Shown: piece after piece, positions 8,775 through 63,070 of the stretch
Numbering within the stretch: the first letter of the stretch is position 1
How the letters are laid out: every line of letters starts with the position of its first letter
Made by a program: the position numbers and the translations under genes
Source of the DNA: Macrostomum lignano
Lineage: Eukaryota
DNA length: 64,000 bases
Reading direction: 5' to 3'
NCBI GenBank assembly: GCA_002269645.1
Contig: NIVC01002917.1
Location: 1 to 64,000 of the forward strand
Notes under the pieces: model-generated
What the model saw: the letters and a program-made list of their open reading frames with translations, nothing else
What the model was told of the DNA's origin: nothing
Databases searched by the model: none

Positions 8775-16108
<7,334 letters not shown>

Positions 16109-17011: not shown

Positions 17012-17298
17012 GGGGTTGTAGACTAGTCGTTAGAGCGTCGGACTCAGTATTGAAAGGTCGGGGGTTCGATTCCCGATCCCACTGGAACAATTTGTATCCT
17101 TGAGTAAGTCACTTAACTCTGAATTGTTTCAGTTCACCCAGCTGTAAAATGGGTTTTAGCTGGGGTAATTGAGAGTGTGTGTGGCAACCCCCCCCCCCAG
17201 TCCTTGGACTGAACAGCCGTACGCAGCCTTCAGATGCGCCGCGCAATAGCTGCGGCTGAGCTGTCGGTTGCACATCTGCCCATTAGGGCAGGTGCAAT
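17012..17298 (+). mobile_element. tRNA-derived SINE with CORE-like central domain, copy 1
   Basis: A-box-like TAGACTAGTCG and B-box GGTTCGATTCC. CCTTGAGTAAGTCACTTAAC..CAGCTGTAAAATGGG resembles the CORE consensus. Two more copies lie in the window. Confidence 0.85.
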
Positions 17299-17403: not shown

Positions 17404-17700
17404 TCAGGGAAAATCAGCCCTAATGATGTCGATGATGCGGTTCATCAGATCGTCGAGCATGTCGCTGAGCAGCTGCTTGTTGGCCTCCGCGATGCCCGTC
17501 AGGTTGTTGGCGATGAGCTGCATGATGGTGCGCACGTTCTCAACCAGATCGCGGCTGCCGATGCCAATCTGGATGAAGATCTCCACGATCTTGGCGATGG
17601 GTGCCGCCAGAACGTTGGCCAAGGTGTCAACAGCGCGACGGATCAGGTCGGCGGCCTCGCCAACCTTGTTCTCGATGTCGGCGCGGAGCTTGTCCAGCAC
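17404..17700 (-). CDS. Secreted protein exon 8 (terminal)
   Basis: VLDKLRAD..IAEANKQLL..ADFP stop. Confidence 0.85.
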   Translation of the reverse strand: MLDKLRADIENKVGEAADLIRRAVDTLANVLAAPIAKIVEIFIQIGIGSRDLVENVRTIMQLIANNLTGIAEANKQLLSDMLDDLMNRIIDIIRADFP

Positions 17701-20700
17701 CTGGGCAGTGGCAGTGGTTGCAGGGAAATTGTCACCATTCGATAGAAATTTTATTCCTAAATGAACATTTTATCAGGTTTGAAAAGACCTGGTGCGCGAA
17801 GGCTGACAGTAGGCTCTTAGGAATAAACTAGCAAACAGAGCTCCCCGTTGGGGCGCCAGCAAAGAATGGAATAATTTTTTTTTGAATAAACTGCATGTAG
17901 CTTCTGACCTTATCCTTGGCATTTCAGCAATTCCCCTCGTAAGCCTTGACATCTCAGCAATTCCCCTCGTAAGCCTTGGCATCTCAGCAATTCCCCTCGT
18001 AAGCCTTGAAATTTCAGCAATCCCAACCCCCAGTGAGCCTTGACGTCTCAGTTTATACAATAATAACTAAAAAAATACATTACGGAGATAGGAGGTGTTC
18101 ATTTTTTCATAACAAATAGTGTATTCTTCTTTTGATACGTCTTGCCCTTCTTATAGCTCTATTGATATTGACAAAGGTTTTCGTTTAAAAAATAGGATTT
18201 TATGTTAATTTTATATCCTACGTATATTTCCTATGCCCAAAATCGATTTGTTTTATGAATCTATTTTTTATCATTCTGTCACACAGTCATGAAGCTTTAA
18301 GAATGATAAAATAGATAGCTCAGGGGTCGGCAGCTCTTTTTTACTGGCCAATGATGGCCAATCTAGCGCATAACTGCGGACCAGGTGAAGGGAGAAGAGA
18401 GGGAAAGAGGAGGAGAGAGAGAGGAGAATAGAGGAGAGAAAAGAGAACAGGAGAGATGAGATATTGAGGTAAGAGAAAAGACACAAACATTGTGCTTTGG
18501 ATTGCTGTTGTGAAGTTTCAAAGGACCAGAGGGCCGGATAGAGAGGCTTCGCGGGCCGTATAGTTTGCCGACTCCTGCTCTAGCTGGTCAACCTTGCCTC
18601 TTATGCAGCAATGTACACTGTAATGTACAGTGAAATTCGTACAGACAAAAGGCTCCCTACGCGGCTGGAAAAGCTTTTCATAGTCTATGGCCAGCTACAC
18701 TGTCAACCACGCGGACAATGAATGGATTCGTATTTTCAGGCTTCGGAGTGACTAGTGATAATACTAATCATAGTAATCACCTCATTAATGAAGGAAATGA
18801 TGGGGCCGAGAATGCGGTTGATAATCTCCAGGAGGATGGAGAAATCCATAGCCTGACGGGCCGCGACCGCGTCGCCGTCGATGATGTCGAGTAGGCCAGA
18901 GATCACCAGGCTAAGAATGCTCTTAAAGATGGCTTTGTTGGCCTCGTGGATTCCGGAGACGCTGTCTGTAAATTAATTGACGTTTTACATGTACTTAAAA
19001 TTTTTTCAATGACCAGAGTTAATAATTGAGTTTTGAGACTCCTACCGATCAGGGTCTCAAGCGCCCTCTTGATAGCCTTGGCGAGGTCGCCAATCTCGAT
19101 GCCGATGTCGTGAAGAACGCCGATAATCTTGACGACCGGATCGCGGAGCAGCAGCGTCAGCTCGTCGATGAGGCGCTGCAATTTGGCCTTGGCTTCGTCG
19201 GTTTTGTCCTCGATCAGCATGCGGATCTGGTCCAAGATCTGGATGGGGTAATCGAAAGCTTTTGAAATAGATTTGATGCTGGACAATGTGTGTCTCTTCT
19301 GTGTGTGAGGATTTCTCCCTCAGGTTGTGTCACAGTTAATTAATGGTAGCTTGTGTCACAGGCTGTCTCCCTCAGGTTGTGTCTCAGTCAATGAATGGTA
19401 GCTTGTGTCACAGGCTGTCTCCCTCAGGTTGTGTCACAGGCTGTCTCCCTCAGGTTGTGTCACAAGCTGTCTCCCTCAGGTTGTGTCACAGGCTGTCTCC
19501 CTCAGGTTGTGTCAGTTAATTGAGTGGTTGCTTGTGTCACAGGCTGTCTCCCTCAGGTTGTGTCACAGGCTGTCTCCCTCAGGTTGTGTCACAGGCTGTC
19601 TCCCTCAGGTTGTGTCAGTTAATTGAGTGGTTGCTTGTGTCACAGGCTGTCTCCCTCAGGTTGTGTCACAGGCTGTCTCCCTCAGGTTGTGTCACAGGCT
19701 GTCTCCCTCAGGTTGTGTCAGTTAATTGAGTGGTTGCTTGTGTCACAGGCTGTCTCCCTCAGGTTGTGTCACAGGCTGTCTCCCTCAGGTTGTGTCACAG
19801 GCTGTCTCCCTCAGGTTGTGTCACAGGCTATCTCCCTCAGCTTGTGTCACAGGCTGTCTCCCTCAGGTTGTGTCACAGTCAATGAATGGTAGCTTGTGTC
19901 ACAGGCTGTCTCCCTCAGGTTGTGTCACAGTTAGTTAATGGTAGTTTGTGTCACAGGCTGTCTCCCTCAGGTTGTGTCACAGTTAGTTAATGGTAGCTTG
20001 TGTCACAGGCTGTCTCCCTCAGGTTGTGTCACAGTTTTCTGTGCCAGCTGATTTGTCAGGCTGGGTCACCGCCCCCTCCCTCAGTGCCAAGCACTCACCC
20101 CGTTGATCTTGCCCAGAATCGGCTGCACAATCCAGCCAATGATGCGGTCAATGATGAGGAAGGCCTCGTCGCGCTTGGGTGCCAGAAGGAAGCCTTTGCC
20201 AACGATGCCCGACACCAGGATGTCCGTCACCTTTTCGATGAGGAGGGCCACAGTCTCCGCACTGATGGAGGCAATTGAGCCGATACCGCCTGAAATAATA
20301 AAGTACATGGTGTCATTGAATCGGAAACTGTTACCAACTACAGTGCACCCCTCAGTCTGATAAATGATCTTACCAAGAACAGCAGCCACCAACTGTTTAA
20401 TGGCGTCCCTCACGTTGACAACCTCGCCGAGGATATTGTTCATGATGTCTATGATGCGGATAGCGAACGGCCGGATGAGCTCGGCGATGGCGTCGGCGTA
20501 GTCCAGAATGTTGTCTCCGATGATGCCGACCTGATCAATCAGGGACAGGATGAGGGACTGCACCTGGCGCTTGGCAAGCTCCAGGAGCGGCTGGATGAGC
20601 TTGTCAAGAATGCCGCGAGCCTGCTTGGGCTGGGCCAGCAGCTGCTGGAACACCTCCAGCTCGGCGGCGGTTGGCAGCAGCTTGTCCACGATGTAGTTGA

Positions 20701-23472
20701 TGAGAGACTTGATGATCTCCTTGTTGGCGTCGCCGATAACGCCAACGTATTCTGTTGTGCAGGTGGCATTTTTGGAGTAAGATTTTGAGCATATAGAGTA
20801 AGACATTCATTTTGGAGCTTCACAGTAGCATGAGGCATATTTACTCAAATTTTTATTCTAAGATCATTTTTATGCATTCAACATAACGCATAATTGGTAG
20901 TTAGGCTATTTTTAGAAGGTAAACCAGTATTACTAAAAGTAAAATAAATTATAAAAGTTATCATTTATTGGTAACTTAAAATTCGAGATTAAAACAAAAC
21001 AATTTTCGAGATTAGCAACTTTGTTTCTTGGAAAGCATAGTAATAAAAAGATGAAGATGATGAAGATGACTCCTGGAGGTGGGCAATCGTGCCTATTCCA
21101 CTGGCCATTGAACACGCACACTGATACGGATACGTACGCATGCACACACTCATACAGGTTGTACACTACAGCAACCATGACTTTTGTCACCGTCATTCCT
21201 GCACACTCTCTGTGCCTTGGAATTTGGCCCTCCTAGACACTTTTCACGGTGCCTGAACCCAAAATTGATGTCGCCACTCGCGCGGCTTCAAACCAAGGAC
21301 TTTGGCGCGAGAGTCGGACGCGTTAAACACTGATTTGCTCAGCCCCACCCCCCCCCCCAGAAAACGGCTCCTCACCGAACAGAGCCTCAACGGCCATGCG
21401 GCTGCCCCCCCCCCAGCAAACGGCTCCTCACCGAACAGAGCCTCAACGGCCATGCGGCAGCCCCCCCCCCCCAGCAAACGGCTCCTCACCGAACAGAGCC
21501 TCAACGGCCATGCGGCAGCCCCCCCCCAGCAAACGGCTCCTCACCGAACAGAGCCTCAACGGCCATGCGGCAGCCCCCCCCCCCCCAGCAAACGGCTCCT
21601 CACCGAACAGAGCCTCAACGGCCATGCGGAAGCCCCCCCCCCCAGCAAACGGCTCCTCACCGAACAGAGCCTCAACGGCCATGCGGATTCGCTCGCGAAG
21701 CTCCACGCCGGCGCCGATGATGTTGTTGATCTGGTCCAGAATCCTAATGACGAAGGGCCTGATCAGTTCGACAAGGGCGTCAATCATCTCCTTGACATTG
21801 CCGATGATGAGACCGCCCTGGTCCTTGATCGAGTTGATGATCGAGTTGATTTGCTGGAATAGTAAGAGAATGCAAATGGCATAGTAGTTGATTTTGGTAG
21901 TTATAAGGGATACAGATAGCAGATGCAGACACAGGTAATTAAAAGTAAATCTGTTCAGCAATGTCTCACAGTCAGCACCAACTGTTTCAGCGGCCTCAGC
22001 AGGATGTCGATGATGCCACTGATGAAGAAGCCAACTTCCTTCCGGTCAGCTTCTGTAGCACAGGATAGTAGTATAAAGCAGTATTACGAGTAATGTCAGA
22101 CTATATCAGGCAGGGGTAAAGGGCGCCCACCAACAGACAGGGGTAAGGGGAAATTATCAAGAGACAGGGGTAAGGGGAAATTATCAAGAGACAGGGGTAA
22201 GGGGCAATTATCAAGAGACAGGGGTAAGGGGCAATTATCAAGAGACAGGGGTAAGGGGCAATTATCAAGAGACAGGGGTAAGGGGCAATTATCAAGAGAC
22301 AGGGGTAAGGGGCAATTATCAAGAGACAGGGGTAAGGGGCAATTATCAAAAGACAGGGGTAAGGGGCGCCCATCAAGAGACAGGGGTAAGGTGCAATTAT
22401 CAAAAGACAGGGGTAAGGGGCAATTATCAAAAGACAGGGGTAAGGGGCAATTATCAAAAGACAGGGGTAAGGGGCAATTATCAAAAGACAGGGGTAAGGG
22501 GCAATTATCAAAAGACAGGGGTAAGGGGCAATTATCAAGAGACAGGGGTAAGGGGCGCCCATCAAGAGACAGGGGTAAGGGGCAATTATCAAGAGACAGG
22601 GGTAAGGGGCAATTATCAAGAGACAGGGGTAAGGGGCAATTATCAAAAGACAGGGGTAAGGTGCAATTATCAAGAGACAGGGGTAAGGTGCAATTATCAA
22701 GAGACAGGGGTAAGGGGCAATTATCAAGAGACAGGGGTAAGGGGCAATTATCAAGAGACAGGGGTAAGGGGCAATTATCAAAAGACAGGGGTAAGGTGCA
22801 ATTATCAAGAGACAGGGGTAAGGTGCAATTATCAAAAGACAGGGGTAAGGTGCAATTATCAAGAGACAGGGGTAAGGTGCAATTATCAAGACACAGGGGT
22901 AAGGGGCAATTATCAAGAGACAGGGGTAAGGGGCAATTATCAAGAGACAGGGGTAAGGGGCAATTATCAAGAGACAGGGGTAAGGTGCAATTATCAACAG
23001 ACAGTGGTAAGGGGCGCCCATCAAGAGACAGGGGTAAGGGGCGCCCATCAAGAGACAGGGGTAAGGGGCGCCCATCAAGAGACAGGGATAAGGGGCGCCC
23101 ATCAAGAGACAGGGATAAGGGGCGCCCATCAAGAGACAGGGCTAAGGGGCGCCCGTCAAGAGACAGGGCTAAGGGGCGCCCATCAAGAGAGAGGGCTAAG
23201 GGGCGCCCATCAAGAGACAGGGCTAAGGGGCGTATATTGACGCCCCTTAGGGTTGCGGCCCCTTTAAATTAATTTCCTGAGCGCGCCACTAAGAGTGCAA
23301 CTTGCTATGACATAAGGACAAACTACCAGTGTCCAGCGCACAGATGAAGCAGCTACTCACTTCCAGCTTCCTCAACCTGCGACTTCCGTCGGATTTCGGC
23401 GGCTGACGCAGTCAGGGCGGCCAGCCCGACGACTCCAAGCAGCAGCACTACCAGCCAGGACGACAATCTCAT
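17404..23472 (-). CDS. Uncharacterised secreted amphipathic alpha-helical repeat protein, 543 aa, 8 exons
   Basis: Exons 23472-23361, 22052-21970, 21853-21661, 20751-20374, 20289-20099, 19238-19046, 18965-18781, 17700-17404. All are GT-AG with consistent phases and total 1632 nt. Signal peptide MRLSSWLVVLLLGVVGLAALTASA; about four internal repeats of about 125 aa; no Cys. Confidence 0.85.
17914..18024. repeat. 30-bp tandem repeat, about 4 copies
   Basis: Unit CCTTGGCATTTCAGCAATTCCCCTCGTAAG. Confidence 0.9.
18321..18577. mobile_element. hAT-type MITE (CAGGGGTCGGCA termini)
   Basis: Ends CAGGGGTCGGCA and TGCCGACTCCTG (11/12 complementary). Flanks AGATAGCT and CTCTAGCT are only a partial TSD. 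A related copy lies at 42988. Confidence 0.6.
18781..18965 (-). CDS. Secreted protein exon 7
   Basis: DSVSGIHEANKAIFKS..GPIISFINE; phase 1-0. Confidence 0.82.
19046..19238 (-). CDS. Secreted protein exon 6
   Basis: ILDQIRML..RALETLI; 193 nt; phase 0-1. Confidence 0.85.
19310..20035. repeat. 26-bp minisatellite with periodic spacer variants (intron 5 of the secreted gene)
   Basis: Unit TTGTGTCACAGGCTGTCTCCCTCAGG. Confidence 0.97.
20099..20289 (-). CDS. Secreted protein exon 5
   Basis: GGIGSIAS..QPILGKING; phase 1-0. Confidence 0.85.
20374..20751 (-). CDS. Secreted protein exon 4
   Basis: EYVGVIGDANKEII..LVAAVL; phase 1-1. Confidence 0.85.
21343..21690 (-). repeat. 55-59-bp tandem repeat spanning an exon/intron junction, 6 copies
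   Basis: Minus-strand unit ATGGCCGTTGAGGCTCTGTTCG|GTGAGGAGCCGTTTGCT(G)9-13CTGCCGC. Confidence 0.95.
21661..21853 (-). CDS. Secreted protein exon 3
   Basis: QINSII..RIRMAVEALF; 193 nt; phase 0-1. Confidence 0.85.
21970..22052 (-). CDS. Secreted protein exon 2
   Basis: KADRKEVGFFISGIIDILLRPLKQLVLT; phase 1-0. Confidence 0.8.
22105..23232. repeat. 27-bp minisatellite, about 41 copies (intron 1 of the secreted gene)
   Basis: Unit AAGAGACAGGGGTAAGGGGCAATTATC; the GGGCGCCC variant is polarised to one end. Confidence 0.97.
23361..23472 (-). CDS. Secreted protein exon 1 (signal peptide)
   Basis: ATG at 23472; hydrophobic leader; GTGAGT donor. Confidence 0.8.

Positions 23473-26406: not shown

Positions 26407-63070
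<36,664 letters not shown>

What the first reader, a model, noticed from the sequence alone, without database searches (positions are those of the whole stretch)
21343..21690. Tandem array of a 5' splice site: six copies of an exon/intron junction with poly-G frame switches
Seen: the repeat unit is the last about 27 nt of exon 3 (R-MAVEALF-G) plus the first about 30 nt of intron 3. The identical donor TTCG|GTGAGG therefore occurs six times (about 21661, 21604, 21545, 21490, 21432, 21376). Units differ almost only in a G-run of 11, 13, 9, 12 and 10 nt, giving lengths 57, 59, 55, 58 and 56. Donor 2 adds 19 aa in frame. Cumulative offsets 57, 116, 171, 229 and 285 make donors 2, 4 and 6 multiples of 3 and donors 3 and 5 frameshifting; donors 4 and 6 restore the downstream frame through an internally shifted insert. 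The paralogous exon 6 ends at the equivalent position, which supports the junction. Known: intronic G-runs enhance upstream 5' splice sites via hnRNP H/F. Inference: a mutable splice-site ladder in which homopolymer slippage and copy number tune isoform length and the productive/NMD ratio, like a contingency locus. It also models intron gain or sliding by tandem duplication.
Basis: partly seen in the sequence, partly recalled or inferred. Interest (0 to 1): 0.8.

Follow-up and report, generated by a model that had tools for sequence, protein, structure and literature searches.

The report
Minisatellite repeating a splice donor six times
A 57-base tandem repeat in a flatworm (Macrostomum lignano) gene starts inside exon 3 and so copies its splice donor six times into the intron; this kind of array is already known from human genes such as F7, and the available transcript evidence shows only the first donor in use.

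Summary
On the minus strand at 21348-21686, six units of 55-59 nt each carry the same TTCG|GTGAGG donor and a G-run of 9-13 nt.

The window is Macrostomum lignano assembly Mlig_3_7, contig NIVC01002917.1. The array sits at the exon 3/intron 3 border of an 8-exon gene for a secreted all-helical protein of 543 aa.

- **Donor 1 is the one seen in transcripts.** Splicing from donor 1 reproduces exactly the RNA-seq-guided GenBank protein BOX15_Mlig018020g1/g2. cDNA contigs of two more distant relatives have a single copy of the unit at this junction.
- **Unit number is stable.** Two other near-identical gene copies in the same assembly also have six units, but different G-run lengths.
- **Reading frame is not conserved.** The ORF survives from donors 1, 2 and 4 in the window, 1 and 2 in one copy, and only 1 in the other.
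- **G-run variation is not special to the array.** The two other long G-runs nearby also differ between copies. The assembly is PacBio CLR, so these lengths are not trustworthy.
- **Repeats are common here.** Tandem repeats make up 33% of the window.

The closest known kind is a minisatellite whose first monomer spans an exon-intron boundary (human F7 IVS7, IFI6, CBS, LMNB2). This is a new member of that kind. The tunable-ladder idea is unsupported.

The parts
21348..21686 (-). Tandem array: six head-to-tail units starting at 21685, 21628, 21569, 21514, 21456 and 21400. The first five are 57, 59, 55, 58 and 56 nt long; the last is a variant.
   Evidence: TRF, unit dissection, exact 39-mer found six times
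21661..21853 (-). Exon 3 of the Mlig018020 gene, ending in the authentic donor TTCG|GTGAGG (last exon base 21661, phase 1)
   Evidence: Gene model identical to GenBank PAA48904.1/PAA54394.1; junction matches the cDNAs of relatives
21371..21607 (-). Five reiterated pseudo-donors, identical to donor 1 (last would-be exon bases 21604, 21545, 21490, 21432, 21376). They lie inside intron 3 when donor 1 is used.
   Evidence: Outcome of each donor: donors 2 and 4 keep the ORF, donors 3 and 5 shift the frame, donor 6 meets a stop.
21348..21643 (-). Six G homopolymers, one per unit: 21643-21633 (11 nt), 21586-21574 (13), 21527-21519 (9), 21472-21461 (12), 21414-21405 (10), 21358-21348 (11). Each begins 18 nt downstream of its donor's cleavage site.
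   Evidence: Lengths differ in the two other gene copies: 11,9,9,9,12,13 and 9,11,9,11,12,13.
21443..21445 (-). In-frame TGA reached when exon 3 is read into the array. It makes donors 5 and 6 non-productive.
20752..21660 (-). Intron 3 (909 nt from donor 1), containing units 2-6 of the array
   Evidence: The intron is 906 and 908 nt in the other two copies.
20374..20751 (-). Exon 4. The acceptor is cag|AATACG at 20751. The exon ends at 20374 in G|GTAAGA, at the residue paralogous to the end of exon 3.
19046..19238 (-).
   Evidence: The acceptor was corrected to 19238 from the homologue alignment.
17404..23472 (-). Whole coding span of the gene, 8 exons: 23472-23361, 22052-21970, 21853-21661, 20751-20374, 20289-20099, 19238-19046, 18965-18781, 17700-17404. 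The product is 543 aa, with a hydrophobic N-terminus that looks like a signal peptide (read by eye) and an all-helical repeat structure.
   Evidence: all-helical prediction at low confidence

Best explanation
The array is a young intronic minisatellite. A segment of about 57 nt, made of the last 25-26 nt of exon 3 and the first 31-34 nt of intron 3, was duplicated in tandem to six units. This happened in a genome where tandem repeats are very common.

The first unit still contains the real exon end, so the authentic donor is followed by five identical pseudo-donors. The spliceosome uses the most upstream donor, and units 2-6 are removed as part of intron 3. The array is therefore nearly neutral, which is why it can persist.

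**Shown here**
- The anatomy of the array and the authenticity of the junction.
- Donor 1 in all available transcript-derived sequences.
- The same six units in three gene copies.
- Loss of reading frame from downstream donors in the other copies.

**Inferred, not shown in flatworms**
- Why donor 1 wins. Candidates are 5'-to-3' (first-come) selection as shown for human F7, and each downstream donor being flanked by G-runs, which in mammals favours the upstream site.
- Donors 2-6 are at most used at a low, noisy level.
- The G-run length differences are ordinary homopolymer slippage, long-read consensus error, or both, and not a tuning device.
For: **Junction and donor 1**
- The donor-1 model gives a closed 543-aa ORF.
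- That ORF is residue-for-residue identical to GenBank BOX15_Mlig018020g1/g2.
- Those gene models come from a genome-guided RNA-seq assembly (PMC5730564).
- Intron-free cDNA contigs encoding relatives with 75% and 60% identity have one copy of the unit followed directly by exon 4.
- The intron position is ancestral. Exons 3, 4 and 6 end at the same residue and phase of the internal repeat.

**Comparison of the three gene copies**
- The copies differ by 0.4-0.6% in substitutions.
- All have six units with the same variant pattern in units 1-4 and the last unit.
- Only donor 1 preserves the ORF in all three.

**G-runs and repeat background**
- The two other G-runs of 10 nt or more in the aligned flanks also differ in length between copies.
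- The assembly is PacBio CLR, assembled with Canu 1.4 and polished with Pilon.
- Tandem repeats cover 33% of the window and 37% of the gene span. They make up 15% of the genome (PMC5730564).

**Precedent**
- Human F7 IVS7, LMNB2 and PDGF use only the authentic upstream donor of such arrays (PMC1557585).
- hnRNP F/H sites on both sides of a proximal donor shift use to the distal one (PMC1326234).
Against: - No read-level RNA-seq or long-read cDNA could be examined, so minor isoforms from donors 2-6 cannot be excluded. In human IFI6 and CBS the second and third donors of such arrays are used (PMC1557585).
- The annotation reports one protein per gene, and transcript assemblers favour the dominant isoform.
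- Unit number is constant across three copies while neighbouring minisatellites vary widely. That could reflect constraint rather than neutrality, although three copies from one inbred line are a small sample.
- Rules for 5' splice site choice and hnRNP H/F activity have not been tested in flatworms.
Confidence: 0.7

Rival explanations
1. One reading: a functional, mutable splice-site ladder. Several donors are used, and G-run slippage and unit number set which donors are in frame. The productive/NMD ratio and isoform length would then be heritably tunable, like a contingency locus.
For: - Six donors are identical over at least 39 nt, so they cannot be told apart locally.
- G-run lengths, and therefore frames, differ between the three gene copies.
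Against: - All transcript-derived sequences use donor 1, and no protein with the insert appeared among the database hits.
- Unit number is invariant in the three copies.
- Frame-preserving donors are not conserved, and one copy has none beyond donor 1.
- Donor 6 is non-productive.
- The G-run differences are matched by unrelated G-runs nearby, and the assembly is error-prone at homopolymers.
- With donor 1 in use, the G-runs are intronic and cannot switch the ORF.
Confidence: 0.07
2. Leaky neutral array. Donor 1 dominates, but donor 2, and perhaps donor 3, is used at a few percent. This would yield a +19 aa isoform in some copies and NMD substrates in others, with no adaptive role.
For: - In the IFI6 and CBS precedents the nearest pseudo-sites are used (PMC1557585).
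- Donor 2 is in frame in the window and in L001.
- The local sequence of all donors is identical.
Against: - No such isoform appeared among the protein database hits.
- In F7, LMNB2 and PDGF the pseudo-sites stay silent.
- Each pseudo-donor has a G-run upstream as well as downstream, an arrangement that in mammals shifts use to the upstream site.
Confidence: 0.2
3. Assembly artefact: the array itself, or its six-fold structure, is produced by misassembly. A weaker form is that only the G-run heterogeneity is artefactual.
For: - PacBio CLR consensus polished with short reads that multi-map among three near-identical loci.
- A 1-nt deletion in exon 8 of copy g3 lies at a site where the other copies differ by C/T, which looks like a consensus error.
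- Other long G-runs also disagree between copies.
Against: - The six-unit array is present on three separate contigs with the same variant pattern in units 1-4 and the last unit.
- At 340 bp, the array is much shorter than a typical PacBio long read, so single reads should span it (general knowledge).
- The strong form is therefore very unlikely. The weak form (G-run lengths partly wrong) is compatible with the best explanation and cannot be settled here.
Confidence: 0.03
4. Coding repeat: the array is exonic and encodes a 19-aa repeat (RMAVEALFGEEPFAGGGGF). On this reading the frame breaks are sequencing errors.
For: Unit 1 is 57 nt and reads through in frame. If every G-run were 11 nt, the whole array would stay in frame.
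Against: - The GenBank protein, an independent UniProt entry and both cDNAs of relatives lack any insert.
- After the array the frame has no matching donor that would restore exon 4.
- The paralogous repeats place a phase-1 intron exactly at donor 1.
Confidence: 0.01

Closest known systems
Human F7 (coagulation factor VII) IVS7 37-bp minisatellite (Borensztajn et al. 2006, PMC1557585)
   Same: - The first monomer spans the exon-intron boundary.
- The authentic donor is followed by pseudo-donors of identical sequence (four to eight in F7, five here).
- The mature mRNA uses the most upstream donor.
- The donors are of similar type: G|GUG... followed by a G-rich intron.
   Different: - The F7 monomer holds only 4 exonic nt, against 25-26 nt here.
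- The F7 unit has a fixed length of 37 bp, whereas here a G homopolymer makes unit length 55-59 nt.
- F7 unit number is polymorphic (5-9). Here all three available copies have six.
- Exclusive first-donor use was proven experimentally for F7. Here it is only inferred from annotation and the cDNAs of relatives.
Human IFI6 (interferon-inducible 6-16) intron 2 and CBS IVS13 minisatellites (as reviewed in PMC1557585)
   Same: A donor is reiterated by a boundary-spanning minisatellite.
   Different: Use of the extra donors is documented in those genes and not here. In this array donor 3 shifts the frame in all three copies and donor 2 in one of them, so their use would mostly give premature stops.
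Human LMNB2 (100-bp) and PDGF intron 4 (81-bp) boundary-spanning minisatellites (PMC1557585)
   Same: Longer monomers carry a reiterated donor, and only the authentic donor is used.
   Different: They have more units (10-18) and are in vertebrates. No homopolymer is reported within the monomer.
[quoted passage not shown] 2010, PMC2891723)
   Same: Tandem duplication of sequence around a splice site provides raw material for moving an exon-intron border. Fixation of donor 2 here would lengthen exon 3 by 19 codons.
   Different: No new intron or shifted border is seen. The intron position is ancestral and shared with the paralogous repeats.
Bacterial contingency loci (phase variation by homopolymer slippage)
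   Same: Long homopolymers whose length differs between copies.
   Different: With donor 1 in use the homopolymers lie in the intron, outside the ORF of the observed mRNA. No on/off expression states are shown, and the length differences may be sequencing error.

Membership tests
Minisatellite whose first monomer spans an exon-intron boundary (F7 IVS7 type) | Head-to-tail tandem array of a 10-100 bp monomer | tested here: met
   Six units of 55-59 nt, 94-96% matches, TRF score 609-634
Minisatellite whose first monomer spans an exon-intron boundary (F7 IVS7 type) | The first monomer contains the end of a genuine exon and the start of its intron | tested here: met
   - The donor-1 model equals GenBank PAA48904.1/PAA54394.1 exactly.
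- cDNAs of relatives join the same residue to exon 4.
- The paralogous exons end at the same position and phase.
Minisatellite whose first monomer spans an exon-intron boundary (F7 IVS7 type) | The authentic donor is reiterated with identical sequence in the following intron | tested here: met
   TTCG|GTGAGG occurs six times, within an exact 39-mer
Minisatellite whose first monomer spans an exon-intron boundary (F7 IVS7 type) | Pseudo-donors are silent or nearly so; the most upstream donor is used | tested here: inconclusive
   All available transcript-derived proteins and cDNAs correspond to donor 1. No read-level junction counts could be made.
Minisatellite whose first monomer spans an exon-intron boundary (F7 IVS7 type) | Unit number polymorphic (VNTR) | tested here: not met
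   Six units in all three gene copies of the one assembly. Population data are not available, so this covers only three copies from one inbred line.
Contingency locus (phase-variable simple repeat) | The hypermutable repeat lies in the ORF or promoter, so that length changes switch expression | tested here: not met
   With the observed donor 1, the G-runs are intronic and do not affect the 543-aa ORF
Contingency locus (phase-variable simple repeat) | Real, heritable length variation of the repeat among individuals or cells | tested here: inconclusive
   G-runs differ between the three copies. So do unrelated long G-runs nearby, and the assembly is PacBio CLR.
Intron gain by tandem duplication of a proto-splice site | A new intron is created between the duplicated copies, absent from relatives and paralogues | tested here: not met
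   The intron position is shared with the paralogous internal repeats in exons 4 and 6. No extra intron is present in the gene model.

The most novel reading that the evidence does not exclude
The pseudo-donors are used at a low but real level. Because each unit carries a slippage-prone G-run, the three gene copies, and possibly individual worms, would differ in which downstream donors give an in-frame protein (+19 or +57 aa) and which give NMD substrates. That would be a homopolymer-phased version of the IFI6/CBS type of multi-donor minisatellite, a combination not described in the literature searched here.
Probability: 0.08. Interest if true: 0.55.

Novelty: new member of a known kind. Interest (0 to 1): 0.27.

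Why it matters
If it behaves as inferred, the array is a natural invertebrate counterpart of the human F7 IVS7 model for 5' splice site choice. It offers six identical donors in a row in an animal where transgenesis is available (PMC5730564). The question of whether 'most upstream donor wins' holds outside mammals could therefore be tested there.

It also shows how a repeat-rich genome can tolerate a minisatellite that begins inside an exon: splicing from the first donor removes all extra copies.

As a gene-regulatory device it has no support at present. For annotation, it is a warning that such arrays create ambiguous splice alignments, and that homopolymer lengths in this assembly should not be used for frame arguments.

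Tried and rejected
- **First gene model was wrong at exon 6.** It used an acceptor at 19298 and added 20 residues absent from all homologues. The acceptor was corrected to 19238, after which the model matched GenBank exactly.
The same sequence was reached through its cluster id P0004.
- **No second homology search with the insert peptide.** The full-length query shares many words with any insert-bearing isoform and returned only three clusters, none with an insert.
- **Coding-repeat reading rejected**.
- **Misassembly of the array rejected:** it is on three contigs.
- **RNA secondary structure:** the array folds no better than shuffled sequence (z = +2.4). G-quadruplexes are not modelled by that tool.
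- **Rfam and tRNA scans of the window found nothing**.
- **Protein family.**
  - Pfam gives only sub-threshold hits.
  - An exhaustive profile-free search finds only weak matches to very long proteins.
  - The AlphaFold model is all-helical but of low confidence (pLDDT 43.7), so no fold search was run.
- **Calibrating homopolymer error from the flanks** gave only two other G-runs of 10 nt or more. That is suggestive but a small sample.
- **A 9-mer (GAGCGAATC / GAGCAAATC) flanks the array** and was considered as a duplication-mediating direct repeat. The unit junctions do not retain it, so no mechanism is claimed.
Full report
**Observation**

On the minus strand, Tandem Repeats Finder reports one array at 21348-21686: period 58, 5.9 copies, 94% matches, score 609.

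- Units begin at 21685, 21628, 21569, 21514, 21456 and 21400. The first five are 57, 59, 55, 58 and 56 nt long.
- Each unit contains TTCG|GTGAGG. The last would-be exon bases are 21661, 21604, 21545, 21490, 21432 and 21376.
- Each unit has a G-run, of 11, 13, 9, 12, 10 and 11 nt.
- Apart from the G-runs, the units differ only in the two bases before the next unit (CTTC, CTGC, CAGC) and by one T in the last unit.
- An exact 39-mer across the donor is present six times.

**Where the window comes from and what the gene is**

A conceptual splice of eight minus-strand exons gives a closed ORF. The first homology search identified Macrostomum lignano.

- After one acceptor was corrected from the homologue alignment (exon 6 starts at 19238), the 543-aa product from donor 1 is residue-for-residue identical to GenBank PAA48904.1/PAA54394.1 (BOX15_Mlig018020g1/g2) and to UniProt A0A1I8HRI9.
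- Locus L006, which encodes that protein, is contig NIVC01002917.1 of assembly GCA_002269645.1 (Mlig_3_7). It is 100% identical to window 7404-33472, with the same coordinates.
- The protein has a hydrophobic N-terminus that looks like a signal peptide (read by eye) and is predicted all-helical, though at low confidence (pLDDT 43.7).
- It has no Pfam family above threshold.
- It has only two clear relatives, plus a few weak matches to very long proteins. It is a lineage-restricted gene of unknown function.

**Is the junction real, and which donor is used?**

Four lines of evidence agree on donor 1 (21661) joined to acceptor 20751.

1. The exact match to the GenBank CDS. That CDS derives from a genome-guided RNA-seq assembly using StringTie, TACO, TBONE and TransDecoder (PMC5730564).
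2. Contigs L002/L003 and L004 from sequencing-run assemblies carry uninterrupted ORFs for relatives with 75% and 60% identity, so they are cDNAs. They read ...CGCATGGCTGTTCAGGCGCTGTTTG-ACTAC... and ...CGCATGGCTGTTGAGGAGCTGTTCA-AGTTC.... Each has one copy of the unit followed directly by exon 4.
3. The protein is an internal repeat. Exon 3, the second half of exon 4, and exon 6 align without gaps over 65 residues. All three end in ...L-x-G with a phase-1 G|GT donor, at 21661, 20374 and 19046.
4. No protein carrying the insert appeared among the hits of the full-length search, and the cluster has only two members, neither with an insert.

**What each donor would give**

In the window:

| Donor | Result |
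|---|---|
| 1 | 543 aa |
| 2 | +19 aa, in frame |
| 3 | frameshift |
| 4 | +57 aa, through a frame-shifted stretch, no stop |
| 5 | frameshift |
| 6 | multiple of 3, but in-frame TGA at 21445-21443 |

**Comparison with the other two gene copies**

Mlig_3_7 holds two further copies: L001 (NIVC01000087.1, g3) and L005 (NIVC01004023.1). They differ from the window by 0.4-0.6% in substitutions between exon 2 and the stop codon. The assembly is known to contain large duplicated blocks of at least 95% identity (PMC5730564).

- **Unit number.** Both copies have exactly six units. The variant pattern in units 1-4 and the last unit is the same (first unit ends CTTC, units 2-4 end CTGC, last unit has TTTTCT); only the end of unit 5 differs (CAGC in the window, CTTC in both copies). 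The array therefore predates their divergence and has not changed in unit number since.
- **G-runs.** They are 11,9,9,9,12,13 in L001 and 9,11,9,11,12,13 in L005, against 11,13,9,12,10,11 in the window.
- **Frame-preserving donors.** These are 1, 2 and 4 in the window, 1 and 2 in L001, and only 1 in L005. Donor 1 is the only one productive in all copies.
- **Other minisatellites in the same gene.** The 27-bp array in intron 1 varies greatly: the distance from exon 1 to exon 2 is 1420, 583 and 4682 nt. The 26-bp array in intron 5 also varies. Intron 3 stays at 909, 906 and 908 nt.

**Are the G-run differences meaningful?**

- In the aligned flanks there are only two other G-runs of 10 nt or more, at 17198 and 31897. 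Both also differ in length in both comparisons.
- The assembly is PacBio CLR assembled with Canu 1.4 and polished with Pilon. Polishing short reads would multi-map among six near-identical units in three near-identical loci.
- Copy g3 has a 1-nt deletion in exon 8, exactly where the other two copies differ by C/T. This truncates its annotated protein and looks like a consensus error.
- The G-run lengths are therefore not reliable enough for frame arguments. Real slippage is also plausible, and the data cannot separate the two.

**Background**

Thirty tandem arrays cover 33% of the window. Four arrays cover 37% of this gene's span. Simple and tandem repeats make up 15% of the genome (PMC5730564). 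A minisatellite that happens to start inside an exon is harmless as long as the first donor is used, because the extra copies are spliced out.

**Comparison with what is known**

The anatomy is a described kind. As summarised in PMC1557585:

[quoted passage not shown] The authentic donor is followed by four to eight identical pseudo-sites, and only the most upstream site is used. The authors attribute this to a 5'-3' oriented selection process.
- LMNB2 and PDGF behave in the same way.
- In IFI6 (6-16) and CBS, two pseudo-sites are also used.

For G-rich elements, hnRNP F/H binding sites placed downstream of both competing donors, and so flanking the proximal one, strongly increase use of the distal upstream donor in vitro (PMC1326234). 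Here every pseudo-donor is flanked by G-runs, while donor 1 has a G-run only downstream. Both precedents predict donor 1. Neither has been tested in flatworms, so that step is inference.

Tandem duplication as a route to shifted intron positions is known (PMC2891723), but no shift has occurred here.

**Other checks**

- The array RNA does not fold better than shuffled sequence (z = +2.4).
- There are no Rfam or tRNA hits in the window.
- Plus-strand ORFs across the array are repeat artefacts.

**Verdict**

The structural interpretation is right.

The functional 'mutable ladder' reading is unsupported. It runs against the transcript evidence available, the invariance of unit number, the lack of frame conservation, and published precedent. 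It is not formally excluded, because no read-level RNA data could be examined.

This is a new, invertebrate member of the known class of boundary-spanning minisatellites. Its one unusual detail is a long homopolymer inside each unit.

Noticed in passing
window 9473-15528: A 6-kb (TAGT)n microsatellite of about 1,500 copies at 96% matches. It produces the extreme GC and AT skew seen at 10-16 kb.
   Followed up: no
window 22131-23231 (intron 1) and 19314-20034 (intron 5): A 27-bp and a 26-bp minisatellite in introns of the same gene vary strongly between the three gene copies. The exon 1 to exon 2 distance is 1420, 583 and 4682 nt. The splice-donor array keeps six units in all three.
   Followed up: partly
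whole window: Thirty tandem arrays cover 33% of the 64 kb. Examples are a 16-bp unit repeated 96 times at 36344-37885 (99% matches) and a 35-bp unit repeated 38 times at 44069-45409.
   Followed up: partly
L001 exon 8 (locus position about 14854); window equivalent about 17624: Copy g3 has a 1-nt deletion (GACACCTTGG becomes GACACTTGG) at a site where the third copy has ACTTTGG. This frameshifts the annotated 511-aa protein PAA91444.1. It is probably a consensus error rather than a pseudogene.
   Followed up: partly
window 17013-17294, 27042-27337, 41852-42143: A dispersed repeat of about 290 nt has three copies in the window at 83-85% identity to a copy in L001. Its translation contains a DRESNPRP motif of the kind seen in tRNA-derived SINEs. 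ARAGORN finds no tRNA there.
   Followed up: no
window 26407 to beyond 33472, minus strand: The upstream neighbour is a large annotated gene (1769-aa product). It has a PDZ domain in the exon at 26407-26829 (Pfam PF00595, E = 9e-18).
   Followed up: partly
window 21694-21686 and about 21337-21329, minus strand: Nearly identical 9-mers flank the array: GAGCGAATC directly before unit 1 and GAGCAAATC directly after the last unit's GGGGCT. The unit junctions do not retain the 9-mer, so its role in the origin of the duplication is unclear.
   Followed up: no
protein P0004 (window gene): UniProt names this protein 'Phage-related protein'. The only support found is sub-threshold Pfam similarity to helical phage proteins (tape-measure C-terminus, phiKZ internal head protein). 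The name looks like annotation spill-over.
   Followed up: partly
window 21669-21647, minus strand, repeated in each unit: Each donor lies in the loop of a possible 5-bp hairpin (GGCUC ... GAGCC). It is the same in all units, so it cannot distinguish between donors.
   Followed up: no
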